Shown here piece after piece: positions 862 through 49,177 of a DNA stretch of 64,000 nt. Under the pieces are notes generated by a model. It saw only the letters and a program-made list of their open reading frames with translations, ran no database searches and was not told the DNA's origin. Position 1 is the first letter of the stretch, and every line of letters begins with the position of its first letter. The position numbers and the translations under genes are program-made. The stretch comes from Styela clava (taxonomy: Eukaryota), in the NCBI RefSeq assembly GCF_964204865.1, contig NC_135259.1:8990001-9054000 (forward strand). Direction: 5' to 3'.

Positions 862-2662
862 ATGGCAAGCTTGGAGCTTTACATCAAGGTAATCTAAGGA
901 AATAATATAAGACCATAAGAAACATGAATTACGTGCATTATAGTAATTGACGGTTTCATACGGGAATGATCGTATTCTAAAGAATTACTTTTTGTAAACT
1001 TACCTATATTTGTGACCGATATTCATCCGTAGGCTCAATATGACGACGGAACAATAAGCTTATAACAGACTTTAGTAAATGGCCAGATGATATATTATGT
1101 AAATTTTCGTATAATATGGTTCTATTGATAGATGATATATTTTTGTGTCCCATCATATTTTTAAGTAATGAGTATATGTAGGTTTAAATATAAAAGTCTA
1201 ACGAGGTTTTTGTTTTTTTAGATTGTTGCATTATGCTCCGTCTGTCTTATCAGCGTATCTTCATTTGACCCTGAGTAAGTGTTTAGTTATGTTCGCCAAT
1301 TTTTCGTAATATATTTATCGGCGTTTTAAGATAGATTGAATTATTAAACTAATATCTAGTATTAATGTATTAATTAAATGTCATACATTGCATAATTTAG
1401 GGTAAAATTAATTCTGACTAGTGCGGTGCTAAAGAATTTAAAAAAAATTATTTATTTTGTTAAAAAATAACATTCATACAGAATTTTGGAATGGTATATA
1501 TGTCTATTTATTCGTATAAATAATACTCTTCATTAAAATCGTACGGTTCTTTAACAAATATTATCTTTTTCCTATAGCTCAGAGTTTATAAGAACTCACA
1601 ACTGCAAAGTCAATAAAACAGAAACAGTAGATGATGGATTTGCTTCTTATTACTTGCATGAGTGAGTACCGAATACATATTTCAACTTTCTAAGACAGTG
1701 TAAAAATGAGTCTGAATTTCCTACGTGCTTTGATTTATTTATCTGTTTTATTACAAAGCTAGTGATATTCTTATTCCGGCTGAGTAATACCACTCGGCAT
1801 TAATATAATTTTAGCTAGACACAGATTCCACATGTTTGTCGCAAAGAGCAATACTTTTTTATATTTTGCTTGGAGAATAAACTAGCTAATTTATACTTCC
1901 CTCCCTTTATAAAACCTTGCAAAATTTTACGATTCATTCATCTACGATATCCGTATTTTCAGGGTTAATTGTATAAACTTAGAGCCAAGTTCTTTCCCAA
2001 GCGCCATATGTTCATCCACAAGATGTCGCGAACCTATAAATGGAAAACCCTTGTCTGGCAAAAGATACGAACCAAAAGAAGTATTGTTTAAACTACACTT
2101 TGACAGTCGTCTAAATGGCAAATTCACAAAATCACTAACAGTTGCATGCAGGTATGTTTTTTATTTCATATTTTATTGCAATATTTAAATTACCCAATAT
2201 ACTAAAAATGCTAACTAGCATAAGAAATTGGTGTAATATTTAACCTCTCAATAAAACAAAAGTTGGGCAGCTATATATTGATAAACACAAGATTGAAAAG
2301 TAAACTATAATATGTTTTTCAACAAAGATCATTCTGAAAATGATTTTGTTTTGTTTTTTCTATTTTCAGTCAACTATCAAAAGTTAATTTAGATTTCAAA
2401 AGAGTATCTTATATTAAAGGTGTATGATTCCTCTTCGCCTTATTAATTAGAAATAGATCATACAATACTTCTTATGGCATCATAAATAATGAAATTTCAA
2501 ACAATAAAAGTGAACCAACATTTAATATTTTACTTTAGATGTGTCAAAGTCGAAAAATTGACTAAACGGCGAAAAGGAGGACGGGGCCGAAAGGGAGGAA
2601 AAGGCAAAGACAAGAAATCTCGTCGAGGAAAAAAAGCGAGAAAAGCTCACACAGACTCATAG
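862..2662 (+). CDS. IL-17-like secreted cystine-knot protein, cluster gene 1 (5 exons, 158 aa, polybasic C-terminal tail)
   Basis: Exons 862-888, 1222-1274, 1578-1661, 1963-2151, 2539-2662; all GT-AG and in frame. Protein: MASLELYIKIVALCSVCLISVSS-FDPDSEFIRTHNCKVNKTETVDDGFASYYLHEVNCINLEPSSFPSAICSSTRCREPINGKPLSGKRYEPKEVLFKLHFDSRLNGKFTKSLTVACRCVKVEKLTKRRKGGRGRKGGKGKDKKSRRGKKARKAHTDS. Signal peptide, C-x4-C and terminal VACRCV resemble IL-17 EAxC..C and VGCTCV. Confidence 0.85.
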
Positions 2663-3365
2663 TGCTTCATTGCCGAACTATTCAGACGTGATTGAAATTG
2701 AAAATGTTTTGTTATCTATTATTTATATATTATTTATCTATTTTTTCATGATTTCGTTTAAGGTAAAAATATTTAAAGCTGACTTTTGTTTTCACTATAT
2801 TCATACATATATATGAAATGCAATATTTTTTTGGGGAATCCAAGTTTGCTTCAGTGTTAAATCGTATAAAATATTTTCAAAAGTAATTATATTTATTATA
2901 TTTTCATGTATTTATTTATCAATTCTATTTATTATTTCCACTGAAAATTGTTCCTTCTTTTAAATATTTTTATAATTTTAATCGACCAAATTTATAGTTT
3001 TCTATTAGCTATTATTTCAACTGGTTTTATCGAAGTCATGGTGCTAAACTTTACATAATTTAATATATTTGTTATATTTGTGCTTCTAATAATTTTAAAT
3101 GAATTACTTTCTGCATAACATGGGCATCTATGATATAGTTGTAGATATGAAAAAGTTGAGTGGATAAGTTAATAACCGTTTTTTGAGGGATTTTGCTTAT
3201 GAGTGAAGTGTGAGTGCGAGTGGAATATTTACCTACGGCGGTAAGAACGATTACATTATCGTCACCACGATAATACTTATTATCTCATGCTTGAGCTGCG
3301 CTCTCGTTATATTGTTCTCTCACCTGTCACGGAGAATAACCTCATGCTTATTACAGACTTTAGTG

Positions 3366-3772
3366 CAGGAGTCGGAAACCTTTTGTCGCTCGCGTGCCAA
3401 AATTAAGGGGTGCGAGTCATTGACGGGCCGCACATATTTTTAGAAAGTTGAAAACCGAACGGATGATACGTTTTATAATAAAAATGAAGCAGTGATACAT
3501 CTCTCGAATAGAATATTGATTTATTTTCTCAATGCATCTCAAAAAATTGCATAGCATCTCAAAAAATTTCATTTGAATATTTTCGGCGCCATTGTACCCT
3601 TTGTATTTAGCATCACCTCTTCTGCGTTTAGTTGCCATTAATTAAACGAGTTCAATAAACGAGGAATTATGAATTTTAATATAATTCAGGGTACACGTGT
3701 CTCACAATAAATTCTGTTACGTATCATTCTGTTGGTCAAAACAGCTGTTGTGCTACTATAATTCAGTGAAGT
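3366..3772 (+). mobile_element. hAT/Charlie-type MITE, truncated copy
   Basis: Starts CAGGAGTCGGAAA; the interior (GGGCCGCACATATTTTTAGAAAGTT...GTCAAAACAGCTGTT...TATAATTCAGTGAAG) matches the complete copy at 51200-51613; the right TIR is absent. Confidence 0.7.
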
Positions 3773-6087: not shown

Positions 6088-6179
6088 GTTACATCATCGT
6101 CACCACAAAAACACTTATTATCTCACGCTTGAGTTACGCTGTCGTTATATCGTTCTCTCGTCTGTCGTGGGGAATAACC
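6088..6179 (+). promoter_or_regulatory. Putative bZIP / TTCTCTCGT / NF-kB module upstream of gene 2
   Basis: GTTACATCA 6088-6096, TTCTCTCGT 6153-6161, GGGGAATAACC 6169-6179. Confidence 0.5.
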
Positions 6180-6446: not shown

Positions 6447-8145
6447 ATGTCAAGCTTAAAGCTTTACGTCAAGGTAAGCCGTAGAAATAATATCATACCA
6501 TAAGAAACATGAATTATGTGCATTAGTGATTGACGGTTTTATATGGGACTGATCGTATTCTAATAAAATAACTGTTCGTAAATGTACATGTAGCCTATTT
6601 GTGACCGATATTGATCTGTAGGCTGAATATGACGACGGAGTAGTATGATTATAACAGGCTCTAGTACATGTCCAGATGATATAATATGTAATTTTTTAAG
6701 AGAAGATGGTACTAAATATTTTGTAAAATATGGTTGTATTGATAATGATATATATTCATGTGCCATCATATTTTTGAATAATAAGTACATGTGAGTGCTA
6801 ATATAAAATTTTAACGTGGGTTTTATTTTTAGATTGCTGCATTATGCTCCATCTATCTTATCAGCGTATCTTCATTTGACCCTGAGTAAGTGTTTAGTTA
6901 TGTTCACTAATTTTTCGTATTATCGGCGTTTTAAAATAGATTAAATAAATATCCAGTATTAAAGTATTAATGAAACGGCATATTTTGTAGATATTGGCAA
7001 ATAATTCAAATGCTCTTCAACAATATCGTATGGCTTATTAACAAATTCTATTTTTTTATAGTTCAGAGTTTATAAGAGCTCACAGTTGCGAAGTTGTCGA
7101 ATCAGAAAAAGTAGATGATGGATTTGCTTCCTATTACGTGCATGGGTGAGTACCCAGTGCATATTTCAAATTTACAAGAGGGGGTTAAAATGAGCCTGAA
7201 TTTTCCTCGTGTTTGATTTATGTATCTGGTTTATTATAAAGCTAGTGATTCCTTATTCCGGTTGAGTAACAACACTCGGCATATTAATATACTTTTAGAT
7301 GGACACAGTGTCAACAGGTTTGTCACAAAGGGCAATACATATTTAGTTTTTGCTTCAAAAAAAGGACAGCCCTTATGCAAATAAATGTATTCCTCCCTAC
7401 CATTAAAAAACTCAATATAATTTTACAATTTATTCATTTACGGTATTCGTATTTTCAGGATTGAATGTAAAAACTTATCGCCAAGTTTCTTCCGCAACGC
7501 AACATGTTCATCCACAAGATGTCGCGAACCTATAAAAGGAAAACATTTGTCTGACAAAAGATACGAACCAGAAGAAGTATTGTATATTCAAAACTTTGAC
7601 AGTCGACTCAGTGGAAAACTTTCACAATCACTAACAGTTGCATGCAGGTATGTTCCCTTTTTATATCATATTTTTAAATCACTAAAATACCAAAAGTATT
7701 AACTAAAATCAGACGATTGATGTAATATTCAACGTCTCAATAAAAGTTGAGCAACTATATATCGACAAACACAATATTGAAAAGTAAACCATAATATTTG
7801 TTCAACAAAGATCATTCCGAATAAGACTTTGTTAATTTTATTTTTTCCAGTCAACTATTAAAAATTGATTAAACATTTGAAGGTATGCTAAATAAAACAT
7901 GCATGATAATTCCTCCTTGAGTGCTTAACTTACACATAGAGAATACAATACCATTTGTAGTATTATATGCAATGAAATTTCAAACTAGAAAAGTAATCCG
8001 GAATTTAATTTTTTTTATCTTCAGATGTGTCAAAGTCGAAAAATTGACTAGACGGCGAAAAGGAAGAAAGGGCCGAAAACGAGGAAAAGGCAAAGACAAG
8101 AAATCTCGTCGAGGAAAAAAAGAAAGAAAAGCTCACAGAGAATAA
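6447..8145 (+). CDS. IL-17-like secreted cystine-knot protein, cluster gene 2 (recent duplicate of gene 1, polybasic tail)
   Basis: Exons 6447-6473, 6833-6885, 7062-7145, 7459-7647, 8025-8145. Protein: MSSLKLYVKIAALCSIYLISVSS-FDPDSEFIRAHSCEVVESEKVDDGFASYYVHGIECKNLSPSFFRNATCSSTRCREPIKGKHLSDKRYEPEEVLYIQNFDSRLSGKLSQSLTVACRCVKVEKLTRRRKGRKGRKRGKGKDKKSRRGKKERKAHRE. Confidence 0.85.
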
Positions 8146-10735: not shown

Positions 10736-11929
10736 ATGAATTCCTGCACTAATAACATGGTAATGGATTTTTTTTTTAAATCGGCATACAGTATGTGATT
10801 AAAGTTATATTAATGTTGTATATTTTTGTTCTCACAGACAACTTCTGCGACTTTATTGGCTTTTCTTACTATGTTTGCATGGAGTACGACAATGGCCCTT
10901 TCAGGGTAAGTAGATCGAATTTGTGTGGTTATTTCGTAACGTGGGTGAAGCATTATAAATGCATATTTAGTTTAGTCGGCTCACAAGTCAAGCTCGTTAT
11001 GTATCCAAGGTACAATCTGTATTGTTTGTTACCCGGACGTGTATTATCAAGTCGCCCGTAATTTCTCTGCGCTATATATTAGCACTATATCATCTAACTA
11101 AATCATACCATCATATTTAAACCTAATTCAAATTTGATAGAATTTTTTTTTGAAAAAATACAATTGCTGTATGAATATAATTCAAAAGTATTACCTAACG
11201 TTCTATAATATTTCAATTCCAGGGCGGAATTTTCAAAAAATCATCGTTGTCAAGAATTTCTGGATGTTGAACTAAATGATAGATATGCACCGCATACCAT
11301 GAGATGGTAAGAAATAACTGAGATTGATTTGTGCCTGCTCTTGATAGAAATATTATATTAAAAATTATTAATTCATCGAACATTTTTCCGCAGTTTGTAT
11401 AATTTGAAGTTGATTGTTGAGGTAAAATATCAATTTTATCTCAACTCCAACATATCATCATTCATGGGAAAAATAATAATGTGCTTATACCGTATATACA
11501 CTAACATGATCCTTGTGATTTTGTAAAGGTTCGAATGTACGAACATGGTTCCCTCAACATACTCAAATACGACTTGTCCACTAAGATGTAGAGATCCTGA
11601 AACAAATCAGTTTCTACCTCTTTCAAGTTTCCGACAGCTGCCTGTATTTGCATGTGAAAGTTTTGAGGTCAGGAGAAATGGAAAAATTTTCAAAGAATCT
11701 GTTGCAATTGTAAAAGGGTGCAGGTGAATTAGTTTTTACTCAACATTTTTTTGGTTGAAGTATTTTAACATTGTAAAAAGTAAATAGGGATTTCTTAAAA
11801 AACAAGTCCACTACATTTCAATTAACACTACAGGATAAGCTATCAATTTTAATTTATTATTTTTTCATTTTATCTAGTTGTGTGGAAGCTGCAACTGCAA
11901 CTAGTAATACATATAGCGTCATGTGTTGA
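10736..11929 (+). CDS. IL-17-like secreted cystine-knot protein, cluster gene 3 (extra internal Cys and C-terminal Cys)
   Basis: Exons 10736-10759, 10838-10905, 11223-11306, 11529-11723, 11878-11929; TATAAA at 10648. Protein: MNSCTNNMTTSATLLAFLTMFAWSTTMALSGAEFSKNHRCQEFLDVELNDRYAPHTMRWFECTNMVPSTYSNTTCPLRCRDPETNQFLPLSSFRQLPVFACESFEVRRNGKIFKESVAIVKGCSCVEAATATSNTYSVMC. Confidence 0.85.
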
Positions 11930-14451: not shown

Positions 14452-15684
14452 ATGAAGATCTCATTTATTAGCACAGCCGTAAGTTTTATAATTTTTGTTA
14501 GATCTCAAATATATTTGTTCTAATATACGCATTGTGTTGTTTAAAACTTTCCGATTTCTTTTTTTCACAGACAAAAATCTTTACAATGATTATTACTATG
14601 ATACACTTTTTTGGACACAACACATTAGCATTCGATCCTGAGTAAGTTGTAATTGTATTATCTACTTTCTTGTGATTTATATCAAATTAAACAGGTATTA
14701 CTTTGATGTACAAAACTGTTATTACGTGTTTTTAACTTTTTTCAAATATATTGATTTTAGCTCTGAATTTTCAAAACTGTACGATTGCAAGCATTTGGAA
14801 ACGTTGGATATTGAATATAACAATGGATTTGCTCCCTACACCCTGCAATGGTAAGTAAAACAAAATAAATTACAAATGTTGTTTTTTAGAAGTAACACTA
14901 CAAGTGCAGCAATCAAAATACGAAAAATGAAAAATTCAACTCAGAATATAATATATAAGAAATAAAGTTGCGCAAATGCTCTACCTGTAATCTTTAATGC
15001 TAATATTTTCAGGATTGATTGTGGACGCAATATCTCTCCTTCAATGTATTCCAACACAACATGTTCTACAAGATGTCAAAGATCCTTCTACTAATCAGTT
15101 TTTATCCGAAATATATCAACAGCAACCGATTCTTGTTTGTGAAACTTTTCAAATCCGAAAAAGAGGACAAATTTCAAAAATTAGAATTAAACTGGCCAAG
15201 GGCTGCAAGTAAAACATTTTATTTTTTGCTTATTTTTCTTATGTGATTCTATCTAAAAGCTGGCAATGGGACTGGTAATAAAACTAAAATATATAAAATT
15301 AGAATATAAATATGTCCTAACCCTAACCTGGTACACATACCGCTGGAGTACCATATTTTTAACATTTTAACCCAGTTTTCTCTCTCACTTAGTGTTTTTT
15401 TTCTGGTAGGGAAAATCTGATGTTACTGCTAATTATCAGATATGCTTGCTTATAAAACACATTTTAAGCAGTAGGAAAGATATCAAGATAAAATTATTTT
15501 AATTAAGTCTAGTTTCTATTTTAATTTCATAAAAATTTAGATGTAGAAAAGTCTAAATCTCTAAATTCTTACACACTATATATCAAGTAGCAATTAATAA
15601 ATTATTTGAATTTAAAAGAAATCTTTTTCCAGGTGTGTCAGATATTCTGACGAATACAGAGATAATATTGAAATTGACTGCTAA
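14452..15684 (+). pseudogene. IL-17-like cluster gene 4, frameshifted in exon 4 (pseudogene, null allele or sequencing error)
   Basis: Exons 14452-14478, 14571-14641, 14761-14850, 15013-15208, 15633-15684. Exon 4 is 196 nt against 195 nt in the closest paralogues. TGTCAAAGAT at 15074-15083 has one extra base, giving TAA at 15092-15094. Corrected protein: ...FDPDSEFSKLYDCKHLETLDIEYNNGFAPYTLQWIDCGRNISPSMYSNTTCSTRC(Q/K)DPSTNQFLSEIYQQQPILVCETFQIRKRGQISKIRIKLAKGCKCVRYSDEYRDNIEIDC. TATAAATA at 14357. Confidence 0.75.
15315..15355 (+). repeat. CCCTAA-containing dispersed repeat fragment (also at ~41418-41460 and inside 62103-62580)
   Basis: CCTAACCCTAA(C/A)CTGGTACACATAC is present at both ~15317 and ~41419. 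Confidence 0.55.
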
Positions 15685-18282: not shown

Positions 18283-19475
18283 ATGGCAAACTTAAAAATC
18301 CAGTTAAGGGTAAGTCAAGATAATTCTGAGCCTAAATGTCATATCTCGGGCCCTAAACCTACCTCGAAAGCTTTTAATATATTATTCCTAAAGAATTTCT
18401 ACTAATCACAGCAAATAGTTCAAAATTTATTCAAATTATACTCGATTTTTTACAGTTATAATACCGAGTACAATGATCAATAAATCGGAGCAATTTTGTC
18501 GTGACATAGTCGATAAAATTTAATGCACAGTAATCAAATGTTTATTTTATCGTCTTATTGAGACAGTAGATATCTTCAAATGTTCAAGTCGGTAAATGGA
18601 AATATAAACCTATTTTTTTATATTTAGATTTCTACTATTTTCACCATTTGCGTCTTGAGCATATCAGCATTTGACCCCGAGTAAGAGTCTAAATATTATC
18701 TAAACTTAATTTCTAAACGTGAGGATTTCATAATTATAAATCAAAAATACTTTTATTGTTGAACTTCCAAATCGTAATTCCTCAAATAGATATGAATAGA
18801 ATTAGAAATACTATATATTTAATTTATAAATCCATTTTTCTATTACTTTTTCACACAAACTTAATCTACTGTCACATTTTACGTTAACAGTTCAGAATTT
18901 TTAAACACGCACAAATGCAAAGTTGTCGAAACGGAATCAGTGACCAATGGATTTGCAACTTATTACGTAGAAAAGTAAGTGAAATATCTTCTAATACCAT
19001 TTTATACGTATTTGCAATATCATTGTATATCATAGCCCAAAGTAGCTCAATTACTTAATGCTTTCAGAATTGAATGTAGAAATCTTTCACCATCATTGTT
19101 TGTAAACGCGACATGTTCATCTGCAAGATGTCAGGACCCTCAAAACGGCAAACTTCTGTCTGGTAGAGAATACAAACCAGAAAAAGTAGTCTACGTGGAA
19201 CATTTTGGAAGCCGAAACGTATCGATTACACAAACATTGACAGTTGCATGCAGGTGTTTACTTATATTTATATTGGTAATATTCCATGCTTCTGGAATGG
19301 TTTCTCACTAACATCCCGAATAATTTTGAAAATAAAAATAATAATGTTATTTGAAACGACAAAAAGTTAAAACAAAAGGATTAATCCAAATTTTATATTT
19401 ACTCATTGAAGATGCGTGAAAGTTGATAACTTGCGTAGCCAGGAATTTGTAGGAAGGGGACAAAGAAGGGGATAA
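18283..19475 (+). CDS. IL-17-like secreted cystine-knot protein, cluster gene 5 (gene 1/2 subfamily, truncated basic tail)
   Basis: Exons 18283-18309, 18628-18680, 18891-18974, 19068-19253, 19412-19475. Protein: MANLKIQLRISTIFTICVLSISA-FDPDSEFLNTHKCKVVETESVTNGFATYYVEKIECRNLSPSLFVNATCSSARCQDPQNGKLLSGREYKPEKVVYVEHFGSRNVSITQTLTVACRCVKVDNLRSQEFVGRGQRRG. TATAAAT at 18120. Confidence 0.83.
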
Positions 19476-20644
19476 GCAATGATAGAAAAGCTCGGCGAGG
19501 AAAAAAAAAGAAAAAATACCAATGACTCGTAATTTCACCTAACGTTTTCAACAGAATACCTAATTGAGCAAATGGCCGTGTTTGACGCATAGTTTAAAAA
19601 CTAGAAAAGTATTCTATTTTATTGTTTTAGCAGTAAATCAATCTTGATTTGTTACTTCATTGAAGTGTATAATAATTGTTGATTTACGGAGGTATCAAGT
19701 TTTTGCTTATTATCTATTATATGTGCTGAAATATTTTGAGTTCCGTATTATTTCAAATGTTGCTTATGTTTCATGTTGCTTATACCTTTTATATTATGCA
19801 ATGTATATTACTCAAATATGGATCGTATTATTTTGAAAACCTATCATGCCGACTTTTATACAAAGCCGCCGCAGAAGACGCGGCGAATAACTCTAACTCA
19901 ACAATGAAACTTTAAAATTACACGTGTGTGTCACAAAAATCGTCGGGATTCTATAATAGCTCTAACAGTGAGCCGATTGTCAATTGAGTATGTCAATTTG
20001 AAATCATCGATGGTTACATTGAGATTAAGAGCAATAAAAGGTCTGTGTTCCGAATCGCTAAGAGCAGAAATTCCGGCCAAAGTAAAATGACCATTACGAC
20101 ACCTGTTTGCGCATGCAGCCATTATTAGCACTTTCGTAATTTCCATGTAAAAACCTGTACACAGTGCCGCCTTATGTAATACGATTGTTATATCGCAAAG
20201 ACGTAATAGTAATATTAAGATAATTTCACTACATATCGAATCACAAGTTTTGGGTCTGAATAAATTTCAGTCGACTGACCTCTAAGTTAGCGAGGTTTAT
20301 TTTAGTAAATATATAGTTTTACAATAAATGTGTATAACTACGGATTTTATGAAATTATCCTCTTAAGTAGTCTTCACATTTTTGAATTAGATTGATTTTT
20401 AATGTTTTTCACATTTACTTTCCTATGAAGCTCTTATGGAGCGGACAAATGCAGGGTGAAGTTGGTGTCGAGAATTAAGTACTTGTTTCTTATGCTATTT
20501 TATATTTTTTCTATTTTATGCCAAATTTCAATGAAGTGGTATTCCCATCGTCGATACAACTTTAGAATACAGCTTTAAAAGGTAGACGGCAGCAGGATGT
20601 CGAAAATGTACCAGCATGGCAAGCATTGAGGTCAATCGCGAAGC

Positions 20645-22347: not shown

Positions 22348-23856
22348 ATGGAAAGGTCATGTTTACAAGTAAGGATTATTATCAACAGTATCTAAATTAA
22401 ATTATAATATTTAAATTTAAACTATTGACTAGCATGTTAGAAATTTAAAATGCTTAATTTAAAAAAGCTAACTGACTGAAGTATCTGGTTTTACTTTTTG
22501 TTGCAGATTTTTGCGACATTGCTTCTTCTTTACGCAATAGTGCCATCAACACCAGCGTCCGGTACTGAGTAAGTATATTATTTCATGTATTCAAGTGTTG
22601 TCATGACCAAATTCGTTATGCTCAAATAATTCAAGTTGATATTTGGATTTGCAATTTTAATAATATATTTACATACAATACCACACTATCCAGCTCAAAT
22701 CGGATGAACGTAGGCTACATTCATACAACGGGAAATTGATAAATATATTCAATCAATTTCGACGTCATCTTCTTCATTGTTTCAAAACTCAGATAAGACT
22801 TATTGTTTAACAAATCTAAATAGTTTCATTTTATTACAGCTTTCCGTTGTCTTCTGCTCACGAATGCTTAGTAACACATACACATAGACGTGTAAACGGA
22901 TTTGCTCCTTACTACACAAAACAGTGAGTTTTTTTCCTAATTTAATTTTTTAGTTTAAAAGTTTATTTGTCAGAACATTCTTCTTTCTTCATCAAAAATG
23001 GTTGTTGGTAGTTTCACAAGATTTTCTGTTAGATATTATTTATACAATGTAGAGATTTTTGCCAAGGAACTTTCTAAGAAAAAAAGGTGTCAAAAATAAA
23101 CTTTCGCTTTGATAGAATCTCTCTCTTCGAATTTTAATTTGACAGTTTTGATCTAACTTGTTCCAAGTCTTTTGTCAACCGCTACTTACTGGCATCTTTG
23201 ACTCATTTTTCACATAAATACACAGTTCCTACAGTGTCTGTTGACGCCTTCATTTCTCCCATCTGATAATAGCCTAGAACTTCAAGTTAAGCAAATCAGT
23301 AAATATAACTACAAAAATAAATTTTTTAGAATTAAATGCAAGCATTTTGAATTTACAAACGCAACATGCTCTTCCACTTGTCGAGATCCTCGGACGGGAA
23401 AACTGCTGTCAAAGAAAAAATATCGTCCGGACCCAATTTCTTGTGTTCAAACTTTTGACAGCAGAATTGAAGGAAAAATAGAGCTTTCCGTAACAATTTC
23501 ATGCAGGTGAAAAATTGAACTTATATATTTATATAAGCTCGCCTATTCCTAAAGATGAGGGTAAATAAATTTGGAAGTGAATCGTATTATTTATATCAAT
23601 ATTAGGCAATATTGAAATCATAAAATGCTAGCTTCCTAATTTTTAAAATATTTATTTAATTAGTTAAATATTGAGCAACAATAAAGTTGCCATAATAAAA
23701 ACTTAATGTATTCAATTACTTCGGGATACTAGATGCATTAAACGGGGAAAACAAACAAAACAAAAGCATGGAAGAAAGCAAAAGACAAGAACTGGCCAAA
23801 GAAAGAACGAAAAAAAAAAGCAAAAACAAAAAATCATAAATGAACCATATTTCTAG
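22348..23856 (+). CDS. IL-17-like secreted cystine-knot protein, cluster gene 6 (Lys/Gln-rich basic tail, one extra Cys)
   Basis: Exons 22348-22368, 22507-22568, 22840-22923, 23330-23506, 23733-23856. Protein: MERSCLQIFATLLLLYAIVPSTPASGTDFPLSSAHECLVTHTHRRVNGFAPYYTKQIKCKHFEFTNATCSSTCRDPRTGKLLSKKKYRPDPISCVQTFDSRIEGKIELSVTISCRCIKRGKQTKQKHGRKQKTRTGQRKNEKKKQKQKIINEPYF. TATAAAA at 22111. Confidence 0.82.
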
Positions 23857-28823: not shown

Positions 28824-30928
28824 ATGGAATATTGTGCCGCTCAACGAGTAACGAAGGTAATGTTTGAATTCAAATATAACTTACATTTTGTGCAGTATAA
28901 TACAATATGTATGAGTATTTTACGGATATGATATTAAAGAATGAGGAAATCAATTTATCACCTAATTGCAAATAGTTTGTCTTGGTAAAATATGTATGAA
29001 AATATGTTTTATTATCTAAAAATATCGTCATTATTGTTACAAAATTCATACAATACAAACAAAGTAATCGGAACAATAATAAACAATTTTCACAAAAAAT
29101 TGTTGATTCTGTAGTTTAACTTAAAAAATAATTTATGGATAAAACTTAATTTGTGCTTTCATTCAATGATAGACCTAGATAGAACCAAAGACATTTACAG
29201 TATAATATAATTTTTCTTATATATGATATTTTTTACTACGAATACCTCTCTATAAGTTTTACTATTTTACTGTTTCACTATTATACTTTAGAGGAAGTTT
29301 GTAATATTCACTGAGATCGTTAATATTATATGAATAGTAATATTATTATTATCTCTTATTTTGTGAACATCTTTCCTTTATTATATATACATAAATATAT
29401 ATTTGTGTTTCAGATCGTCAAACGCACAATTGTCTTCGTATTATGTCTTTTCTTCGTGTTACATGTGACTACGTGTTTTGATCCAGAGTGAGTACGCTGA
29501 CTTATATACATTTTTGTTTTAATAATTTGCACTAGATTTCTTCGTCCAATCCTGCGCTCTAAGGTTTTTGAGTGAGAAGAAAAATGTATTCAATAAACCG
29601 TTGAATGTAGTATACGAAATAGGGCTGTGACAGAATTATAACTTATTCCACAAAGTTGTCACCTGGCAATTAATTTTTCATTCAAAGGAAGGGCAAAATC
29701 GCAGTTTTGTCACCAATCTTATATTTTCTAATGCTGCTTTTGTACAAAAGATATTTAATAAAAATGTAAAATTAAAAACAAGCCTTCTCATGTTTGAACT
29801 TTAATTTTATATTGAAGTCATCGTTTTTTCTATTTTAGATCTGAATTTTCCAAAGCGCATAACTGTAAAATAATTGACAACGGTACTCAGCGGGATGGAT
29901 TTGCACCATACACTGTATTTGTGTAAGCACTTTAGTTTGTAAAGTACATACCATACGGTACTGTAGTGTACAGGTACTTGTTCGATATCAGATTGATACA
30001 ATAACTCCAAGACGAAAAAGTTTACACTCGAAAAACCTAACATATTTCCAATTATTAACCATTTATGTACCTTAGTTAAAATTTATAAATTCACAGATTT
30101 TAGTTATTTCAGCTCTTTAATTTTTATGCGTCTCTGCACCGATATTTGTCTACTGAAAGCATATTACAGAAATAAAAAACCAGATTTTGAATTGTAAAAT
30201 ATATAATATTATTTCTAGTGAGGGATTCAATATATTAAATAGTCCAAATATATCCACGTGAACAAATGCCTTATTTACATGTATTTCTCGGGAAATTATG
30301 AACAAAATAATAAAATAATTTTTATGTTTTCAGAATCGAATGCCAAAACATTTCGCCTTCAGTATACACGGAGGCGACATGTTGGTTGAAATGTCGACAA
30401 CCTCGAGTAAGAAGAAATTTACCACTAACAAGATTTCGACCTAAACCTATTTATTCCTACATGGTGTTTCAAGTGCGACGAGGTGGAAAATTGTTCACGC
30501 ATACCGAGAGAATAATAAGAGCTTGCAGGTCAGTTAAATTTATGACTTTAACTTATTTTACCAAAAGTCTAAGCAAACTTCAAGCAAGTAGAGAAAAAAC
30601 TAGCAATTATAGATAATTGAATTATTTTGCGAAAATTTTATTTATGATTTTCACGTTGAAACTGTGATAAAATCTTAATCTTATTATCTCGTAATGAATA
30701 AACAGAATGTCATCTAATGAGATAACAACCACTTCGTTGTTGTCTTCTAGATAAAAAATTAAGAAATTTCTGTAAAACCAAGCAGGGTTTGCATTGCATA
30801 CATCCTTACAAATAAAGTAAAATCACTATTTCAGATGTGTTATAACTAAAAGACAAGATCGCTGGAGAATCTTTAAAACACTCGATGAAAGAACTTTCAG
30901 TTTACCAACCGTGGGGGTTCAATCGTAA
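28824..30928 (+). CDS. IL-17-like secreted cystine-knot protein, cluster gene 7
   Basis: Exons 28824-28856 (alternative in-phase donor after 28847), 29414-29487, 29839-29922, 30334-30528, 30835-30928. Protein: MEYCAAQRVTKIVKRTIVFVLCLFFVLHVTTC-FDPESEFSKAHNCKIIDNGTQRDGFAPYTVFVIECQNISPSVYTEATCWLKCRQPRVRRNLPLTRFRPKPIYSYMVFQVRRGGKLFTHTERIIRACRCVITKRQDRWRIFKTLDERTFSLPTVGVQS. It keeps the IL-17-like PS..EAxC, PI and VRR motifs. Confidence 0.87.
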
Positions 30929-30996
30929 TTCTTTTAGTCATTGAAAACACTGTGTTACTTATCCTAACTTGCATGTATTTACAATAACTGTATATA

Positions 30997-34573: not shown

Positions 34574-36098
34574 TTAGCGATTGATCTCCACAGTTGGTGT
34601 GGTGCTGTCTACTTCGTTTCCTGAGTGATCATTTTGTAAATAACCATCATGTTTTTTTGTCTTTACGCACCTGATTTGGGGAAAAAATAGAACCATTACA
34701 ATAACTCTAAAATTAAGCTTTGTCGATCAGCAAATTTTTTGAGGAATATTATAAAAGCTCATTTTATAGACTAAAGCACATGTGAATATGCCAAGATGTT
34801 CTTTATTCTTTAAGTAAATGGCAATATATTCACGACATATTTTACGAATACACGAAAAATTAAAATAGTAGTTGCTTGAGAGGAGTAAAGTTGGACAACT
34901 CAATTTTAGTAGATCAAAGACCGGTCTTACCTGCATGCCTGAGTTACTCTGACAGTGTGGCTGTATTCTTTATCATCTTTTCTGACTGTTAATTCAACGA
35001 GTGATTCAATGGGTACTGGGTGATACTTCTTTAGAGTAAGACTTCGTTTACTTCGTGGATCTTTGCAAAACTTCCAACATTTTCCGTCAACGAAAATACT
35101 TGGTGAGGTGTTGACACATTCGATACTGTAAAATTTAAGGTAAAATATAAATACAATGAAACTTTTTAAATATTAAGAAGTTGATGTTTTGTAAACAATT
35201 ATAAACAAGTACGTATTTCGAATCCAAGACATTCATTACGTGTTTTATGATAGCTGTAATATCTGCATTTTTGTTTTATTGGAAGCAAAGTAAAGCGGAA
35301 GGTGGTGAAAAATAAAAGTGAAGCTAAATCTATTACTTTTGAGAATATTCAATGTGCCACTAAAATATAGCGAATAAAAAGTAAATAATTTATTTGCTCA
35401 AAATACCCTCATTGTATACACGACCCAAAAATTACCTTCCAGAACAAGCAAAAACACTCACATTTACTTGAATTAAAATTTTCATACTAAATAATTGGAC
35501 TCCGTGGAAAATAATAAATTGAGTTACTCACATTTCCAGTTTATAAGGAGCAAACCCATCTCGTTTCACAATTCTGTCTATAATATTGCACTTATGATCT
35601 TTCGCGAACTGTGATCTACAAAATAAATGTTCAAATACTTTAAGCATATTATTAGTCGTATGGATACTGCAGTTTCAACATTCAACAATTGCTATTCAAA
35701 TGCTGCTAGTCAGTCGCAATATTGATTGATTAACCTGAGAAAAAATCGCAAAGAGGCTTTTTGATCACGTATTACGATATATAGGCTTGTATAAATCAAT
35801 TTTATGAAAAAATACACTATATAGTAGTGATATTCTGCGATTCTGTACTTTGTATGTATAAAATGTACTTATGTGCTACATACTTACTCGGGATCAAATG
35901 CTTTCGCTCCGGTTATCAAATGTAATAATTCGCAAGTCATTGCAAATATTGCAAGTGTCTTGAACACCTAAAAGTAAGTTAGGAACGAGTTATTAACTTG
36001 TTTACATTATACTATATGAAAAAATATTTAAAGTTTTAACCTAAGAATAATTGTACAAAATCTTTACTTACTTTTGGTGACAACAATTTAGCTGGCAT
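34574..36098 (-). CDS. IL-17-like secreted cystine-knot protein, cluster gene 8 (minus strand, polar/acidic tail)
   Basis: Exons 36098-36072, 35967-35888, 35615-35532, 35125-34931, 34670-34574. Protein: MPAKLLSPKVFKTLAIFAMTCELLHLITGAKA-FDPESQFAKDHKCNIIDRIVKRDGFAPYKLEIIECVNTSPSIFVDGKCWKFCKDPRSKRSLTLKKYHPVPIESLVELTVRKDDKEYSHTVRVTQACRCVKTKKHDGYLQNDHSGNEVDSTTPTVEINR. TATAAATA on the minus strand at 36185-36192. Confidence 0.87.
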
Positions 36099-39522: not shown

Positions 39523-41673
39523 CTAAGAAGTTCTAGCAGGCCAACGCCTTGAGTAATGCTTCTCCCGCCATCTGAGAACACATCTAAATCATAAAAAGAA
39601 AGCCATATGAGATGATAATTTTATAATATAATACTAAAGTTGTATTAATTTCAAGCATACATGTGAAATTACCTGCATCCTCTAATCAACCTTTTCGTCA
39701 TAACGAATATTTTTGAGTTTCTTCTTGCTTCGAAGCTATAAATAGCTTCAATAGGCTGAATTCGGTATTTTCTTAAAGAAAGAAATGATTGTGTTCGTGG
39801 GTTTTGACATCGGGTCATGCAGGTGGCATGCATAAAAACACTCGGAAATAAATTATCGCATTCAATCCTAAAAAAATATCGTAAGAAACGATTAAATGAA
39901 CATGTTTGAATACTATGTAAAATATTTTGTCTGTCCAAAGCAGAGTTTCCCAAGCTGGAGTCTTCGGACACCTGTAGCTTTGCGACAGTTGCGATATGAT
40001 AAGAGTCTGAATGATCTTCAATGATTGATTTCATAAAAAAGCCATTGCATCTTTTTAGTTGAGGGTTGCGGAAAAATATCACCGGCTATTAGAAAAGGAA
40101 ATTAATTTTTTTTGCCTTTTGCAACGACCTACATGTGTAAGGCAGCATTTTCAGCTCTTACCAATTTGATGACAAAATACTGGACGAGACTTGATGTAGA
40201 GTCGGAGTTTGCTTGTCACAAATTGCGCCAGGAATTGATAAATTGTGCAGTGAAAAGCAAGCGTATCCGTCACATAAATGCCGTTTGCATTGTTTTGTTG
40301 TGAATGAAACATTATCCTTCCTCGTCGGTCAGGCACAAGAATTAATACGACATATAATGGGGAACCGCCATAGATAAGATTCACAAACAGGGGTCCGCGC
40401 CTAGAAAGTTTGGGAAACCCTGGTCTAAAGAATGTCCGTTTGTTTACTTACATAAATACACGAAAAATACATAGAAAATGTATCTTTATGAAACTATATA
40501 CTGGAATGCGACTGATTGGCTCTGAAATTGATATGATAACCATATACTCACCATTTTAAGTTAAATGGAGCGAGACCATTATTTATCATTTCGTTGCTAA
40601 TGATTCTGCAGTTGAACTGTTTTGCGAATTCTGACCTAAATAAATAAAATACTGAAATTGAAAGATAAAAAAAAATATCATGCAGATAATCAACAATAGC
40701 AAGTAGTGATAAACGAACTCTGACAATCTCAGATACTCACTCAGGATCGTAAGCATTCGCATTTGACTTCAGATGGTTAAACGTCATATACAAAATCAAT
40801 ACCAAAACCTGGTAATAAAAAAATGTTTAAATATTACAAATTGTTGATCATATTACCACTGGTTTCTTAACTATTTGGGATATTTTAGAATGTACTCTCA
40901 GTTCATGAATTTCCTTCCAATACCTACTTTTATCTACAAATCAATATAGAATGCTGATAGTTCGTCAACAAACATTTGATGAAATTTAACTCCCATATTA
41001 GTTGCACAAAGCACGAAAGAGTTGCTTCATAAACAAATAGTAAAACCTCTTGCTCATCTGTATCAGCATGATATTACACTTATTGTTACAAAGTTTATAA
41101 AGTAAATTTAGTAGAACGATTACACCAGTGTTTTTAAGTACAAATATACATAATATTATAGTATGTAATTAAGCACTTTGCAATAGTATTGGGTCCAACT
41201 CTGTTGGCCTCGAATACTATAAATTCTAGATTACATGTCCATGACATCAGTCGGAATGCACTACAACAGATAGGCGTGTGCATAATATCTGCAAAAATGT
41301 CGGCGCTTCAGAAGTATGTGTACCAATATGGAGGTAACTAATTTTGTTCGCCTACTTTAGATCAAGTTATGTAGAGGGACTGAAGCCTATGGGCGGGGGC
41401 TATATTCCCTTGGCTTACACAGACATGTCCCAAACTCGTGATAGAACTAAAATAAAGAAAATCGGAATAAAATTATGGCCTAACCCTAAACTGGTACACA
41501 TACTACGGGTGTGCCAAAATGCCATTGTACACCCCATTACTATATTTCTTATTGTTTGGTTCCTCGACAGGCAATTGATTTAGCTTTTCAATTAATAATA
41601 ACCTAATTTGATGCATTTTGTCTAAACAAATCTACAATCCTTAGAGTATTACCTTATGTTCCCCGCATGCCAT
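39523..41673 (-). CDS. IL-17-like secreted cystine-knot protein, cluster gene 9 (minus strand)
   Basis: Exons 41673-41653 (least certain), 40808-40741, 40635-40552, 39867-39673, 39583-39523. Protein: MACGEHKVLVLILYMTFNHLKSNANA-YDPESEFAKQFNCRIISNEMINNGLAPFNLKWIECDNLFPSVFMHATCMTRCQNPRTQSFLSLRKYRIQPIEAIYSFEARRNSKIFVMTKRLIRGCRCVLRWREKHYSRRWPARTS. Confidence 0.83.
39941..40422 (+). mobile_element. Internally deleted hAT (Charlie/Buster) transposon in intron 3 of gene 9
   Basis: TIRs CAGAGTTTCCCAA / TTGGGAAACCCTG; 8-bp TSD GTCCAAAG / GTCTAAAG. The internal remnant 40112-40210 reads LPFATTYMCKAAFSAL..TKY..RLDVE, the hAT C-terminal dimerization motif. Confidence 0.88.
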
Positions 41674-46500: not shown

Positions 46501-47164
46501 GGAGTAACGCTGAACGCCTCCATCACTTGACATATTTGTTGGTGAGTGACGTCATCAACGCCCACTAGTACACCATTCTGCATTATTTTTGAAATTTTTT
46601 TTTTTTTTATTTATTACCAAAACATTTGAGAAAGTTTGTAGCCAATCACATGTAGAAGCAATGTTAAATAGATGGAATTTCCTATATTGTGTACTCTCAA
46701 GATATGTTGATCTAAAAGTAGTAAAACTAGGATATGAATGTATATATCAAAAATTATAGGACTGGCGGAACCTTTATGTTTGTGAATTTATCAAGTATGA
46801 ATACGTTAATTGAATTGCGTAAAATATCTGAAATACTCCTATCCATCCTATTTAAAAATCATTATAAACAATATTTAATAAACTAATGCGCATAATAATT
46901 GTATTTTGATGTGACTGCGATACATTCAAAGTAGACTTGGCCAAAATTCGCATTAACGTAGTAAATTTGATTAGTATTCGTCAGCCATCACGACAATGAA
47001 ACGAATAATTTCTGATTAGTATCACATAGTACGAGATATCACTTGGTCCACGTTAAAAAGATCATATTCAAAGTTTTTCACAGTGCGCCCATGCACGACG
47101 AAGAACACATTGTATTATTTATCTCATGTCGCGATATAAAATGACGATTGACTCTAGGAATACA

Positions 47165-47444
47165 AACGAGAGAACTACACACAAACCTCTCGCGTTACGC
47201 AAAGCTACGTCGTCTCAAAGCCGTGCGTGTTTCCTTTTTTTGCAAACTGAAATTCCCAATCTTGAGAACATAGTTAGCTCACTTTATTTCCAACGTGAAC
47301 AACTGCGACGGGGCCTCGGCCCGCGGCGGAGGAGGCGTGGGTGTGGGTTTTGGAAAGCAAAGAAGGGAATCCCCGTCAGGGATCTGGCTGATATTTAATT
47401 CACAATATGAACATGTTTCTTACAGCATTCCAGAGGGTATAAAA
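47165..47444 (+). promoter_or_regulatory. Gene 10 promoter: AACGAGAGAA, C/EBP site, consensus NF-kB site, TATA box
   Basis: AACGAGAGAA 47165-47174, TTACGCAA 47195-47202, GGGAATCCCC 47365-47374, TATAAAA 47438-47444. Confidence 0.6.
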
Positions 47445-47569
47445 GTTACCAATCATGGAATACATTCATTTAATCCAGCATTTGGTTGAAACTAAGCAGA
47501 GACTTTTAGTGTCAGTGAATTTTTTGAAATTTTATTGCAGTTCAAGTTTTATCTGCAAAAGCAACAGCG

Positions 47570-49177
47570 ATGAAGAAGGTATTTGCATTAACGATAAAAT
47601 TCAACTATTATCAGAAGTCAAAATTCAAAGTACTAACGTATTACTTGCTTTTAAGTCTACGGTAGACGAGTTAATGTTTGAATTTATAACCTCCCAGTCG
47701 TAGGCAATTACCATAGATGCGCATTATTCGTACTATTAATTCAGTAATCTTAATTCATCTTTTTTGAATTCAGGTTTGTTGGTTTTCGTTTGGAGTTATT
47801 TTACTTGTTGTAGTAAGTGGTCCTGTAGAAGCTGCAAAGATGAGAAAAGGACTAACTTGTTTGTCGTGAGTATATTTCATGCAATAATTTTAAATCAAAA
47901 CTTTAATTAAAGTATAAAGCAGATATTTATATATATATATATACATTGTAAATTTGGAAAAATAACTAACCCCGTTCATGAATATTGTTTTTGTACATGA
48001 CCGAATAACAAAATTTAGCGATTGTTAAAACGATCTAAAATACCTATGCTTCAGACTGCAGCAAAAAATAGGTCAAATTGCAAAAGTTACGTTGAACTAT
48101 TCCAATTTTGGAATACATTATCTTTTTTTATTATATAATAGAAAATATATCCGATGCTCAAACACGTAGCACTTTGGAAAACAATGATAATAAACATATT
48201 AATATTATTTTATTTTTATAGGAAAAGATTTATTAGAAAATACTGCACCTCAACTGATGAAGAAATCGAGAGAGATGAAAAGGGATTTGTACCTCATGAA
48301 ATTAGAAAGTAAGTAATGTAGCCTACTTAATTTTAGTAAAATTGAAGTACTTGACACTAATAATTGATTCGCAAATGGCAAAGCATCCAACGGAAAACTT
48401 CGAGATCTTTAATCAGTATAGATATAAATAAATTTTATATTTCAAGATTTAAATTTTTATTTAATCGTTCAAATACAGGTACGATTGCCGTAACTTGAAT
48501 GTCACACAAATAATTGACAAACCATGCGATAAAAAATGTCGAGACCCTGTGACAAAAAAGAAGAAGCCTGGTAAATTATACAAGGTTGAAAGAATTTGTT
48601 ATTACAGAGAGTATGAAAACAGAGACGGAAAAATTGAAAAAATAAAATTGACTGCTGGATGCAGGTGAGATAATATTTTTCAAAACCTCAAAGTCAAATC
48701 TTCAGAAGACAAAATCTAAGGATTTCATAAAATGCGCGAAGTGTCCAATTGAAAGTTCTGTGCCTCATGTTAGATACTTTGACACAGATACTTGTATAAC
48801 TATTTGTTTGCATTTTACTGTCAACCGGGTGCATGGCACATATAGATAAAACTAGGCACAAAGTAGTTTCTGATAGAATAATACACGCGTTCTATAAAAT
48901 AATAGTTTCTGCAAATAAATTATGCGAATAAAACTATGTTCCCTTGACAAGCTCGTAAAATTTCGTTTTTCGGGCCGAATTTTTCATCAACGAATTTCAA
49001 GAGATACTGCTCTAATACTAAATTTGTACAAAATTATTAAATAATAAGGTTGTTAACATAATTATTTTTATAAGGTGAAAATTGAACACGCTTTTACGCA
49101 ACGTCGAAATTGTCGAAACAAATATTACAAACACTTTTTATTTCTACAGATGCGTCAAGAGACGACAAAAATCATGA
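47570..49177 (+). CDS. IL-17-like secreted cystine-knot protein, cluster gene 10 (most divergent copy, two extra Cys)
   Basis: Exons 47570-47578, 47774-47865, 48222-48308, 48479-48664, 49150-49177. Protein: MKKVCWFSFGVILLVVVSGPVEA-AKMRKGLTCLSKRFIRKYCTSTDEEIERDEKGFVPHEIRKYDCRNLNVTQIIDKPCDKKCRDPVTKKKKPGKLYKVERICYYREYENRDGKIEKIKLTAGCRCVKRRQKS. Same intron phases as the other copies; TATAAAA at 47438. Confidence 0.82.

What the first reader, a model, noticed from the sequence alone, without database searches (positions are those of the whole stretch)
862..49177. Cluster of ten divergent IL-17-like cystine-knot cytokine genes hidden from ORF scanning
Seen: ten five-exon genes with the same intron phases (0,2,2,2), a usually 84-nt exon 3, a 177-196-nt exon 4, a last intron that always splits the CxC motif, signal peptides and six invariant Cys. 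Established: IL-17 proteins have SPW-x-Y, P..EAxC-x(n)-C, VPI, LRR and VGCTCV motifs. Inference: APY, SPS..(E/N)ATC..C, PI/PV, VRR and VACRCV correspond to these motifs. This would be a lineage-specific expansion of innate-immune cytokines, more copies than the six human IL-17 genes. It may extend left, since the window starts inside a duplicated unit. No exon is long enough to be called from the ORF track.
Basis: partly seen in the sequence, partly recalled or inferred. Interest (0 to 1): 0.9.

Follow-up and report, generated by a model that had tools for sequence, protein, structure and literature searches.

The report
Divergent IL-17-like gene cluster, sea squirt
The window holds ten tandem copies (nine intact) of a small secreted protein gene of the sea squirt Styela clava that public annotation calls "uncharacterized" but that sequence profiles and predicted structure place in the interleukin-17 cytokine superfamily, as part of a much larger expansion of about 39 such genes.

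Summary
The window (Styela clava, C13:8,990,001-9,054,000) carries ten paralogues with one five-exon plan: intron phases 0,2,2,2, and a last intron inside the C-x-C motif. Nine read open. g4 has a 196-nt exon 4, which shifts the frame. I did not find exon 1 of g9. A spliced RNA contig confirms all four junctions of g3.

The IL-17 reading is supported:
- Pfam IL17 aligns end to end with four window proteins, but below its cut-off (12-21 bits against 24).
- A family profile hits only IL-17A/F among the first 25 solved chains.
- hhalign links the family to canonical S. clava IL-17 (E 4e-7) and to a Pfam-positive intermediate type (E 4e-9).
- AlphaFold models of g7 and g10 match IL-17A/IL-25 (Z 8.8 and 7.7), clear of NGF, PTTH, noggin and Spaetzle (Z 3.7-5.9).

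The cluster is larger than reported. There are 39 exon-4 matches genome-wide, 31 of them on C13 between 8.96 and 9.23 Mb on both sides of the window, besides 33 canonical IL-17 loci elsewhere.

RefSeq already models these genes as uncharacterized proteins. Cytokine function, dimer formation and receptor use are inferred, not shown. The scan noted similar IL-17-like families on other pieces of this genome.

The parts
862..2662 (+). g1: five-exon IL-17-like gene with a polybasic C-terminal tail. Exons 862-888, 1222-1274, 1578-1661, 1963-2151, 2539-2662.
   Evidence: AG/GT at all junctions, phases 0,2,2,2, open frame. It is the seventh copy of a 6-kb tandem unit that continues to the left of the window.
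6447..8145 (+). g2: five-exon gene with a polybasic tail. Exons 6447-6473, 6833-6885, 7062-7145, 7459-7647, 8025-8145.
   Evidence: Model. It equals RefSeq XP_039260751.2 (P0019), mapped. Pfam IL17 12.3 bits for the sister model P0002.
10736..11929 (+). g3: five-exon gene. Exons 10736-10759, 10838-10905, 11223-11306, 11529-11723, 11878-11929.
   Evidence: Model; equals XP_077972923.1 (P0004). A 411-nt contig of run X10 lies on it in five pieces. The three larger skips are listed with GT..AG ends; the fourth is shown by the pieces. There are no mismatches.
14452..15684 (+). g4: same plan, but exon 4 (15013-15208) is 196 nt. One extra base near 15078-15080 shifts the frame into a stop, so this is a probable pseudogene or an assembly error. 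Other exons: 14452-14478, 14571-14641, 14761-14850, 15633-15684.
   Evidence: The older RefSeq model XP_039260757.1 (P0009) reads through without the shift.
18283..19475 (+). g5: five-exon gene. Exons 18283-18309, 18628-18680, 18891-18974, 19068-19253, 19412-19475. The tail is short; a polybasic tail is readable only in another frame at 19451-19516.
   Evidence: tail remnant.
22348..23856 (+). g6: five-exon gene. Exons 22348-22368, 22507-22568, 22840-22923, 23330-23506, 23733-23856. Shortest exon 4 (177 nt), polybasic tail; exon 5 is uncertain.
   Evidence: The old RefSeq model P0007 ends by read-through after exon 4.
28824..30928 (+). g7: five-exon gene. Exons 28824-28856, 29414-29487, 29839-29922, 30334-30528, 30835-30928.
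   Evidence: equals XP_039262204.2 (P0003). Pfam IL17 17.7 bits. AlphaFold model pLDDT 85. Best structural match IL-17A/F, Z 9.4.
34574..36098 (-). g8: five-exon gene. Exons 36098-36072, 35967-35888, 35615-35532, 35125-34931, 34670-34574.
   Evidence: equals XP_039262112.1 (P0005). Pfam IL17 15.0 bits.
39523..40808 (-). g9: exons 2-5 at 40808-40741, 40635-40552, 39867-39673, 39583-39523. Exon 1 was not identified.
   Evidence: RefSeq XP_039260756 (P0001) starts at an internal Met. Pfam IL17 20.8 bits, the best of the window.
47570..49177 (+). g10: the most divergent copy. Exons 47570-47578, 47774-47865, 48222-48308, 48479-48664, 49150-49177.
   Evidence: equals XP_039261671.2 (P0006). AlphaFold model pLDDT 83. 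Best matches IL-25 Z 7.7 and IL-17A Z 7.6.

Best explanation
These are genes of a fast-evolving, tunicate-lineage subfamily of the IL-17 cytokine superfamily.

Shown:
- Each gene encodes a protein of about 130-160 residues. An N-terminal hydrophobic signal is spread over exons 1-2. The mature part is spread over exons 3-5.
- The mature part has the IL-17 arrangement of four knot cysteines: C-x3/4-C, then about 44 residues, then C-x-C.
- It is predicted with high confidence to take the IL-17 fold.
- At least g3 is spliced as modelled.

Inferred:
- The two knot disulfides pair as in IL-17A/F (g7 numbering C80-C128 and C84-C130). The knot would then be the incomplete 'T2' kind that PMC11087794 describes for tunicates and vertebrates.
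- The two further invariant Cys (C45, C67) close the N-terminal beta-hairpin.
- The proteins are secreted, dimerise like other IL-17s, and signal through IL-17R/SEFIR receptors, whose genes are present in the genome. The likely setting is innate defence.
- The polybasic tails of g1, g2 and g6, and of the copies to the left, tether the ligand to sulphated glycans or add a direct antimicrobial action.

The array grew by repeated tandem duplication. Some copies are identical, and one in the window is decaying.
For: Homology:
- PF06083 gives domain-length, in-register matches to g9, g7, g8 and g2 (20.8, 17.7, 15.0 and 12.3 bits). It is above the cut-off for the family member P0018 (34.7 bits) and for a same-genome intermediate locus, L010 (32.5 bits).
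- The family profile against PDB lists IL-17A/F as 24 of the first 25 hits, E 0.02-0.16.
- hhalign of the S. clava members against canonical S. clava IL-17 gives 92.8 %, E 3.9e-7. Against L010 it gives 96 %, E 3.9e-9 over 83 columns.

Fold:
- AlphaFold core pLDDT is above 95.
- Foldseek's top 38 hits are all IL-17 family.
- VIA-align gives Z 9.4, rmsd 2.1 over 81 residues.
- A search that does not depend on Foldseek ranks IL-17A 8.8 and IL-25 7.9, ahead of NGF 5.9, PTTH 5.6, noggin 4.8 and Spaetzle 3.7. The order is the same for g10.

Genes:
- Consistent splice sites and phases; a spliced RNA contig for g3; RefSeq models.
- Constraint: dN/dS 0.1-0.8 between g1-like copies and g2.
- Receptor side: 7 SEFIR loci in the genome.
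Against: - No window protein reaches Pfam's gathering score, and g3, g6 and g10 get no IL17 hit at all. Exon 4 alone gives nothing.
- The PDB profile E-values are only marginal (about 0.02).
- Both structures are predictions from shallow alignments (18 and 19 sequences).
- Z values of 8-9 lie near the tool's stated grey zone, although they stand about 3 units above the next family.
- Transcription is shown for one gene, by one contig, in a run whose RNA label is a guess.
- No evidence bears on induction, dimer formation (the complex job gave no verdict), disulfide pairing or receptor binding.
Confidence: 0.8

Rival explanations
1. The proteins belong to another cystine-knot ligand family (neurotrophin/NGF, Spaetzle/coagulogen, PTTH/Trunk, noggin, TGF-beta/DAN), and the IL-17 likeness is only the shared knot.
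For: These families appear lower in the structural lists: NGF Z 5.9, PTTH 5.6, TGF-beta2 4.9, noggin 4.8, coagulogen 3.9, Spaetzle 3.7. Six cysteines and local motifs such as C-R-D-P and A-C-x-C-V also recall NGF; that resemblance is from my own memory of the NGF sequence and was not tested.
Against: No Pfam model of these families matches at E up to 10; only IL17 does. The IL-17 chains stand about 3 Z units higher and cover the whole domain at lower rmsd. The cysteine spacing of 4-5 / about 44 / 1 is that of IL-17A/F, not of NGF. hhalign joins the family to this genome's own IL-17 genes.
Confidence: 0.04
2. The proteins have an IL-17 fold but are not classical cytokines. The expanded, fast-diverging copies with polybasic tails would act as effectors (antimicrobial, or binding matrix or tunic) or as non-immune signals, as IL-17-like CFSH does in crustaceans.
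For: Recurrent polybasic C-terminal tails are seen in g1, g2, g6 and the left copies, and in relatives P0013, P0014 and P0016 from unnamed source organisms. Copy number is very high: 39 loci. Constraint is relaxed, dN/dS up to 0.8. PMC11087794 groups CFSH, Trunk and PTTH with IL-17s in its trees, which shows that the fold serves other roles.
Against: Nothing here speaks directly for effector action. Several copies (g3, g4, g7, g8, g9) lack a basic tail. SEFIR-domain loci, such as IL-17 receptors and their adaptor carry, are present.
Confidence: 0.15
3. Most copies are non-functional products of recent tandem duplication, so the array is largely a gene graveyard.
For: g4 is frame-broken. Two copies on the right carry stops. 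Relic exon-2 fragments lie in each 6-kb unit on the left. Three left copies are identical in coding sequence and intron. RNA evidence exists for g3 only.
Against: Nine of ten window copies keep open frames, all splice sites and all six Cys at 23-44 % identity. That is not expected without selection. dN/dS is below 1 in nearly all pairs.
Confidence: 0.08

Closest known systems
Vertebrate IL-17A/F and IL-25 (PDB 1jpy, 4hsa, 7uwj)
   Same: Predicted fold (Z 8-9.4, rmsd about 2 A over about 81 residues). Four knot cysteines with the same spacing. Motifs around S/A-P-W/Y, P-S-x-x-x-A-x-C and G/A-C-x-C-V aligned in register.
   Different: 17-20 % identity. Two extra invariant Cys in an N-terminal hairpin. 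Polybasic tails in some copies. The domain is split by two phase-2 introns, one of them inside C-x-C. The genes lie in arrays of dozens.
Canonical Styela clava IL-17 genes (33 PF06083 loci on C1, C2, C3, C5, C8, C10, C19)
   Same: Same genome, same superfamily by hhalign (E 3.9e-7); also tandemly clustered.
   Different: The canonical genes carry the C-L-C-K-G-C-I ... G-C-T-C-V part in one exon and pass Pfam's cut-off. A branch with 99/98 support separates them from the window family.
Intermediate type: C1:22,958,643 (L010) and the unnamed protein P0018
   Same: It shares the extra Cys in Y-x-C-(K/R)-N-x-x-P-x-x-Y, the N-P-x-T motif and A-C-K-C-V with the window family (hhalign E 3.9e-9). It falls on the same side of the tree.
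   Different: It keeps S-P-W, passes Pfam IL17 (32.5 and 34.7 bits), and has the whole domain in one open frame without the two introns.
Ciona IL-17-1/-2/-3 (Vizzini 2015, as cited in PMC11087794) and the IL-17 expansions of marine invertebrates (Saco 2021, PMC8353272, as cited there)
   Same: Tunicate or invertebrate IL-17 ligands. PMC11087794 states that tunicates have only the incomplete T2 knot, which fits the pattern seen here by alignment.
   Different: No named IL-17 of any species was reached by the exon-4 profile at E up to 1e-3 in 1.84 billion representatives, nor by the family profile. PMC11087794 gives two to four IL-17s for most species and over ten for amphioxus and some molluscs. 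I could not fetch Ciona sequences for a direct comparison.

Membership tests
IL-17 (Pfam PF06083) | Score at or above the curated gathering cut-off (24 bits) | tested here: not met
   g9 20.8, g7 17.7, g8 15.0 and g2 12.3 bits; g3, g6 and g10 have no IL17 hit. The matches cover profile positions 2-3 to 80-81 of 81 (13-80 for g2). The cut-off is met by the family member P0018 (34.7) and the same-genome locus L010 (32.5).
IL-17 (Pfam PF06083) | Four knot cysteines: C-x(3-5)-C, about 45 residues, C-x-C near the C-terminus | tested here: met
   Invariant in all copies. In g7 they are C80, C84, C128 and C130. HMMER and hhalign align them to the IL-17A/F and canonical S. clava knot cysteines.
IL-17 (Pfam PF06083) | Incomplete knot of olfactores (T2: no Cys at knot positions 1 and 4; PMC11087794) | tested here: inconclusive
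   By alignment, Ala/Ser/Thr/Val stands where IL-17F has the Ser before P-W. Position 4 is not aligned reliably. Model coordinates could not be inspected.
IL-17 (Pfam PF06083) | IL-17 three-dimensional fold | tested here: met
   Predicted models only. g7: Z 9.4 (pdb_via) and 8.8 (wide search). g10: Z 7.7. In both, IL-17 family chains fill the top ranks and the next family is about 2.5-3 Z lower.
IL-17 (Pfam PF06083) | Profile-profile homology to accepted family members | tested here: met
   hhalign 92.8 %, E 3.9e-7 to ten canonical S. clava IL-17 exons; 96 %, E 3.9e-9 to L010.
IL-17 (Pfam PF06083) | Secreted: N-terminal signal peptide | tested here: met
   A hydrophobic N-terminus is encoded by exons 1-2 in 9 of 10 copies, read from the models and predicted as an N-terminal helix. 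g9's exon 1 was not found. No signal-peptide predictor was available.
IL-17 (Pfam PF06083) | Dimeric ligand | tested here: inconclusive
   The complex job on two copies of g7 residues 33-140 returned no verdict.
IL-17 (Pfam PF06083) | Binds IL-17R and signals through SEFIR/CIKS | not testable with these tools
   Only the presence of 7 SEFIR loci in the genome was shown.
Neurotrophin / Spaetzle / PTTH-Trunk / noggin cystine knots | Best HMM or structural match to that family | tested here: not met
   No Pfam match at E up to 10. Structural Z: 5.9 (NGF), 5.6 (PTTH), 4.8 (noggin), 3.7 (Spaetzle), against 8.8 for IL-17A.

The most novel reading that the evidence does not exclude
Styela clava carries about 70 IL-17-superfamily genes, the largest such set I know of in a chordate (from PMC11087794 and my own knowledge). 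About 39 belong to a subfamily that Pfam cannot call and that public annotation leaves unnamed. This subfamily gained phase-2 introns inside the knot domain, an extra hairpin disulfide and, in many copies, a polybasic tail. It would act as matrix- or tunic-tethered, possibly directly antimicrobial, IL-17-fold effectors rather than as ordinary diffusible cytokines.
Probability: 0.2. Interest if true: 0.7.

Novelty: new member of a known kind. Interest (0 to 1): 0.5.

Why it matters
[quoted passage not shown] In tunicates the IL-17 ligands I know to have been characterised are three Ciona genes. PMC11087794 gives two to four IL-17s for most species.

This cluster shows that a tunicate can hold dozens of additional IL-17-fold genes that standard domain annotation misses. 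That changes gene counts used in comparative immunology. It gives names to a block of "uncharacterized" RefSeq genes. It also offers a natural series, from identical copies to 23 % identity, with and without basic tails, for asking how IL-17 ligands diversify against a small set of receptors.

It is an extension of a known pattern of lineage-specific IL-17 expansion in marine invertebrates, not a new kind of system.

Tried and rejected
- Pfam on exon 4 alone (nine copies, by reference) gave no IL17 hit at E up to 10. The six-frame PF06083 scan of the genome found 33 loci but none in the window. The domain is too divided and too divergent for exon-wise detection.
- The search for homologous proteins with the family profile returned only four proteins, all already known.
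The organisms behind the unnamed relatives P0010 and P0012-P0018 could therefore not be identified.
- The homodimer job (complex prediction, g7 residues 33-140, two copies) gave no verdict and is not used as evidence either way.
- The supplement of PMC11087794 is not held, so its tunicate species list and counts could not be read.
- Runs X9 and X11 laid nothing on g2-g3. X6 gave only two 18-base pieces of an unrelated contig. g2 therefore has no RNA support here.
- Positive selection: dN/dS stays below 1 in all but one low-count pair, so I make no claim of diversifying selection.
- Pfam on eight other ORFs of the window (33.5-63.7 kb) gave nothing.
Full-length searches used the database proteins returned, which equal my models of g2, g3, g7, g8 and g10. 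g1, g5 and g6 were searched by exon 4 only. Joined reading frames were computed only inside scripts, to check phases.


Full report
**What is there**

The window is AT-rich eukaryotic DNA (GC 0.29-0.35). It is G000:C13:8,990,001-9,054,000 of a 377-Mb assembly. Proteins recovered from it are RefSeq entries of Styela clava, a stolidobranch sea squirt. All are named "uncharacterized protein LOC...".

A motif scan and a tblastn of one exon-4 peptide against the window found ten copies of the same unit of about 63 residues. Seven lie on the + strand (g1-g7), two on the - strand (g8, g9) and one more on + (g10). Mutual E-values reach 1e-25.

**Gene structure**

- In all ten copies exon 4 starts right after an AG. 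It ends with TGC plus two bases followed by GT.
- Exon 5 starts with one base and then TGT or TGC. The last intron therefore sits inside the C-x-C motif in phase 2.
- Exon 3 is 84 nt in eight copies, 90 nt in g4 and 87 nt in g10.
- Exons 1 (9-33 coding nt, phase 0) and 2 (53-92 nt) encode a hydrophobic N-terminus.
- Complete AG/GT-bounded models with phases 0,2,2,2 and open frames were obtained for g1, g2, g3, g5, g6, g7, g8 and g10.
- RefSeq proteins found independently map onto exactly these exons for g2, g3, g7, g8 and g10.
- A 411-nt contig from a public run of the same species (X10, RNA by guess) lies on g3 in five pieces without a mismatch. The three larger skips are listed with GT..AG ends, and the pieces show the fourth junction. 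One of the listed skips is the intron that splits C-x-C.

**Exceptions**

- g4's exon 4 is 196 nt. One extra base near 15078-15080 throws the frame into a stop. An older RefSeq model reads it without the shift (P0009).
- g9 has exons 2-5, but I found no convincing exon 1. RefSeq starts it at an internal Met.
- g6's exon 5 has a poor acceptor.

**What it is**

Exon 4 alone is invisible to Pfam. A six-frame scan of the whole genome with PF06083 finds 33 loci elsewhere but none in the window.

An HMM of nine exon-4 peptides, searched against 1.84 billion representative proteins, returned 18 proteins. Ten are from S. clava: seven are the models of window genes, and three (P0008, P0009, P0011) have no model in the window, P0009 being the older reading of g4. 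The other eight come from unnamed assemblies.

Run as full-length proteins, seven of the 18 match Pfam IL17:
- Window genes: g9 20.8, g7 17.7, g8 15.0 and g2 12.3 bits, all under the 24-bit cut-off.
- Relatives P0013 at 22.0 and P0015 at 10.9 bits, also under the cut-off.
- P0018 at 34.7 bits, above the cut-off.
- All but the g2 match (profile 13-80) span profile positions 2-3 to 80-81.

Further sequence evidence:
- A profile of the 18 proteins, searched against all PDB sequences, lists IL-17A/F as 24 of its first 25 hits (E 0.02-0.16). A-P-Y falls on S-P-W, P-S..A.C on P-S..A.C, and C-R-C-V on C-T-C-V.
- The canonical IL-17 genes of the same genome were fetched and aligned. hhalign of the S. 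clava-only family alignment against them gives 92.8 % and E 3.9e-7.
- Against one Pfam-positive locus of an intermediate kind (L010, C1:22.96 Mb; 32.5 bits), hhalign gives 96 % and E 3.9e-9 over 83 columns.

Structure:
- AlphaFold2 models of g7 (pLDDT 85, core above 95) and of the most divergent copy g10 (pLDDT 83) were compared with the PDB.
- Foldseek's first 38 chains for g7 are all IL-17A, IL-17F or IL-25.
- VIA-align gives Z 9.4 and rmsd 2.1 A over 81 residues.
- The search that does not depend on Foldseek ranks IL-17A 8.8, IL-25 7.9 and IL-17A 7.8. Then come NGF 5.9, PTTH 5.6, TGF-beta2 4.9, noggin 4.8, coagulogen 3.9 and Spaetzle 3.7.
- g10 gives IL-25 7.7 and IL-17A 7.6, then NGF 5.2.

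**Extent**

The exon-4 profile finds 39 places in the genome. Of these, 31 lie on C13 between 8.96 and 9.23 Mb.
- To the left of the window, five more g1-like copies follow at a period of 6.03 kb. Each unit also holds a relic exon-2 fragment. Three of these copies are identical in coding sequence and intron.
- To the right there are at least 16 more places. Most of those fetched belong to a second subfamily (RefSeq P0011 and P0024) with the same five-exon plan. Two carry stops.

A maximum-likelihood tree separates the ten canonical S. clava IL-17 exons from everything else with 99/98 support. Inside the divergent side it recovers g1-g2-g5 and g7-g8-g9-g3-g4 groups. Relations to the proteins from other, unnamed organisms and to the intermediate type are unresolved.

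**Constraint**

Nei-Gojobori dN/dS is 0.65-0.79 between g1 and g2, and 0.1-0.5 among most g1-like copies. Evolution is fast, but positive selection is not shown.

**How it probably works**

Shown: gene plan, splicing of g3, superfamily membership by profiles, and predicted fold.

Inferred from the known behaviour of IL-17 ligands:
- cleavage of the signal peptide and secretion;
- two knot disulfides as in IL-17A/F, that is, the incomplete T2 knot that PMC11087794 reports as the only type in tunicates and vertebrates;
- a family-specific third disulfide between the exon-3 Cys and the I-E-C Cys, which sit at the two ends of the predicted N-terminal hairpin (strands 46-53 and 60-66);
- dimer formation;
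- signalling through IL-17R-type receptors. Seven SEFIR loci exist in the genome.

The polybasic tails are found in g1, g2, g6 and the left copies. They are also found in the relatives P0013, P0014 and P0016 from unnamed source organisms. This suggests glycan tethering or an added antimicrobial action. The idea is untested.

**Novelty**

- The genes are already modelled in RefSeq but carry no name.
- The literature searches found no paper that treats IL-17 genes of S. clava.
- PMC11087794 gives two to four IL-17s for most species and over ten for amphioxus and some molluscs.
- I file this as a new, Pfam-invisible subfamily of a known superfamily, inside an unusually large repertoire (33 canonical plus about 39 divergent loci).
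- First-stage notes of this scan describe similar IL-17-like families on other pieces of the same genome and features of the left-hand units.

**Limits**

- The dimer job gave no verdict.
- Model coordinates could not be inspected.

Noticed in passing
window 15013-15208 (g4 exon 4): One extra base in a short A run (about 15078-15080) makes exon 4 196 nt long and brings a stop after RCQRSFY. The older RefSeq protein XP_039260757.1 reads through. This may be a pseudogene allele or an assembly error.
   Followed up: partly
G000:C13:8,961,221-8,992,662 (loci L014-L016 and window 1-2662): A tandem array of 6.03-kb units, each with a g1-like gene and a relic exon-2 fragment (for example at 8,964,031 and 8,970,063). 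Three units are identical in coding sequence and intron 3, so the duplication is very recent or the repeat is collapsed or expanded in the assembly.
   Followed up: partly
G000:C13:9,061,383-9,231,398 (loci L017-L025 and beyond): At least 16 more exon-4 matches to the right of the window. Most of those fetched form a second subfamily (I-R-C-P-S-N-V-Y-P-S...; RefSeq P0011, P0024) with the same five-exon plan. The copies at 9,132,637 and 9,139,675 carry stops.
   Followed up: partly
G000:C3:14.84-14.87 Mb and 2.18-2.23 Mb; C5:14.72-15.08 Mb; C2:18.35-18.38 Mb and others: 33 canonical PF06083 (IL17) loci, mostly in tandem clusters, each with the whole knot part in one exon. This is itself a large IL-17 expansion for a tunicate.
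   Followed up: partly
G000:C1:22,958,643-22,961,720 (L010): Two loci of an intermediate IL-17 type. They keep S-P-W and pass Pfam, but share the extra Cys and other motifs with the window family, and have no introns inside the domain. They may be a model for the ancestor of the window family.
   Followed up: partly
window 19412-19516 (g5 exon 5): g5's tail stops after 20 residues. A polybasic tail like that of g2 is readable in another frame at 19451-19516, so the tail seems to have been lost by a frameshift.
   Followed up: no
window 40741-40808 (g9) and 23506-23510 (g6): The RefSeq models look incomplete here. g9 starts at a Met inside exon 2 and so lacks a signal peptide. The old g6 model ends by reading through the exon-4 donor into TGA.
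   Followed up: partly
window 57648-63750: Several ORFs of 108-190 aa on both strands gave no Pfam match at E up to 0.01. Another first-stage note calls this region an LRRC8-like channel gene. I did not examine it further.
   Followed up: no
G000:C6:2,014,719; C6:12,853,775-12,881,928; C1:9,808,077; C14:10,069,843; C13:2,694,613; C13:7,989,834-8,011,456: Scattered further matches to the exon-4 profile outside the main cluster. One (C6:2,014,719) has an in-frame TGA.
   Followed up: no
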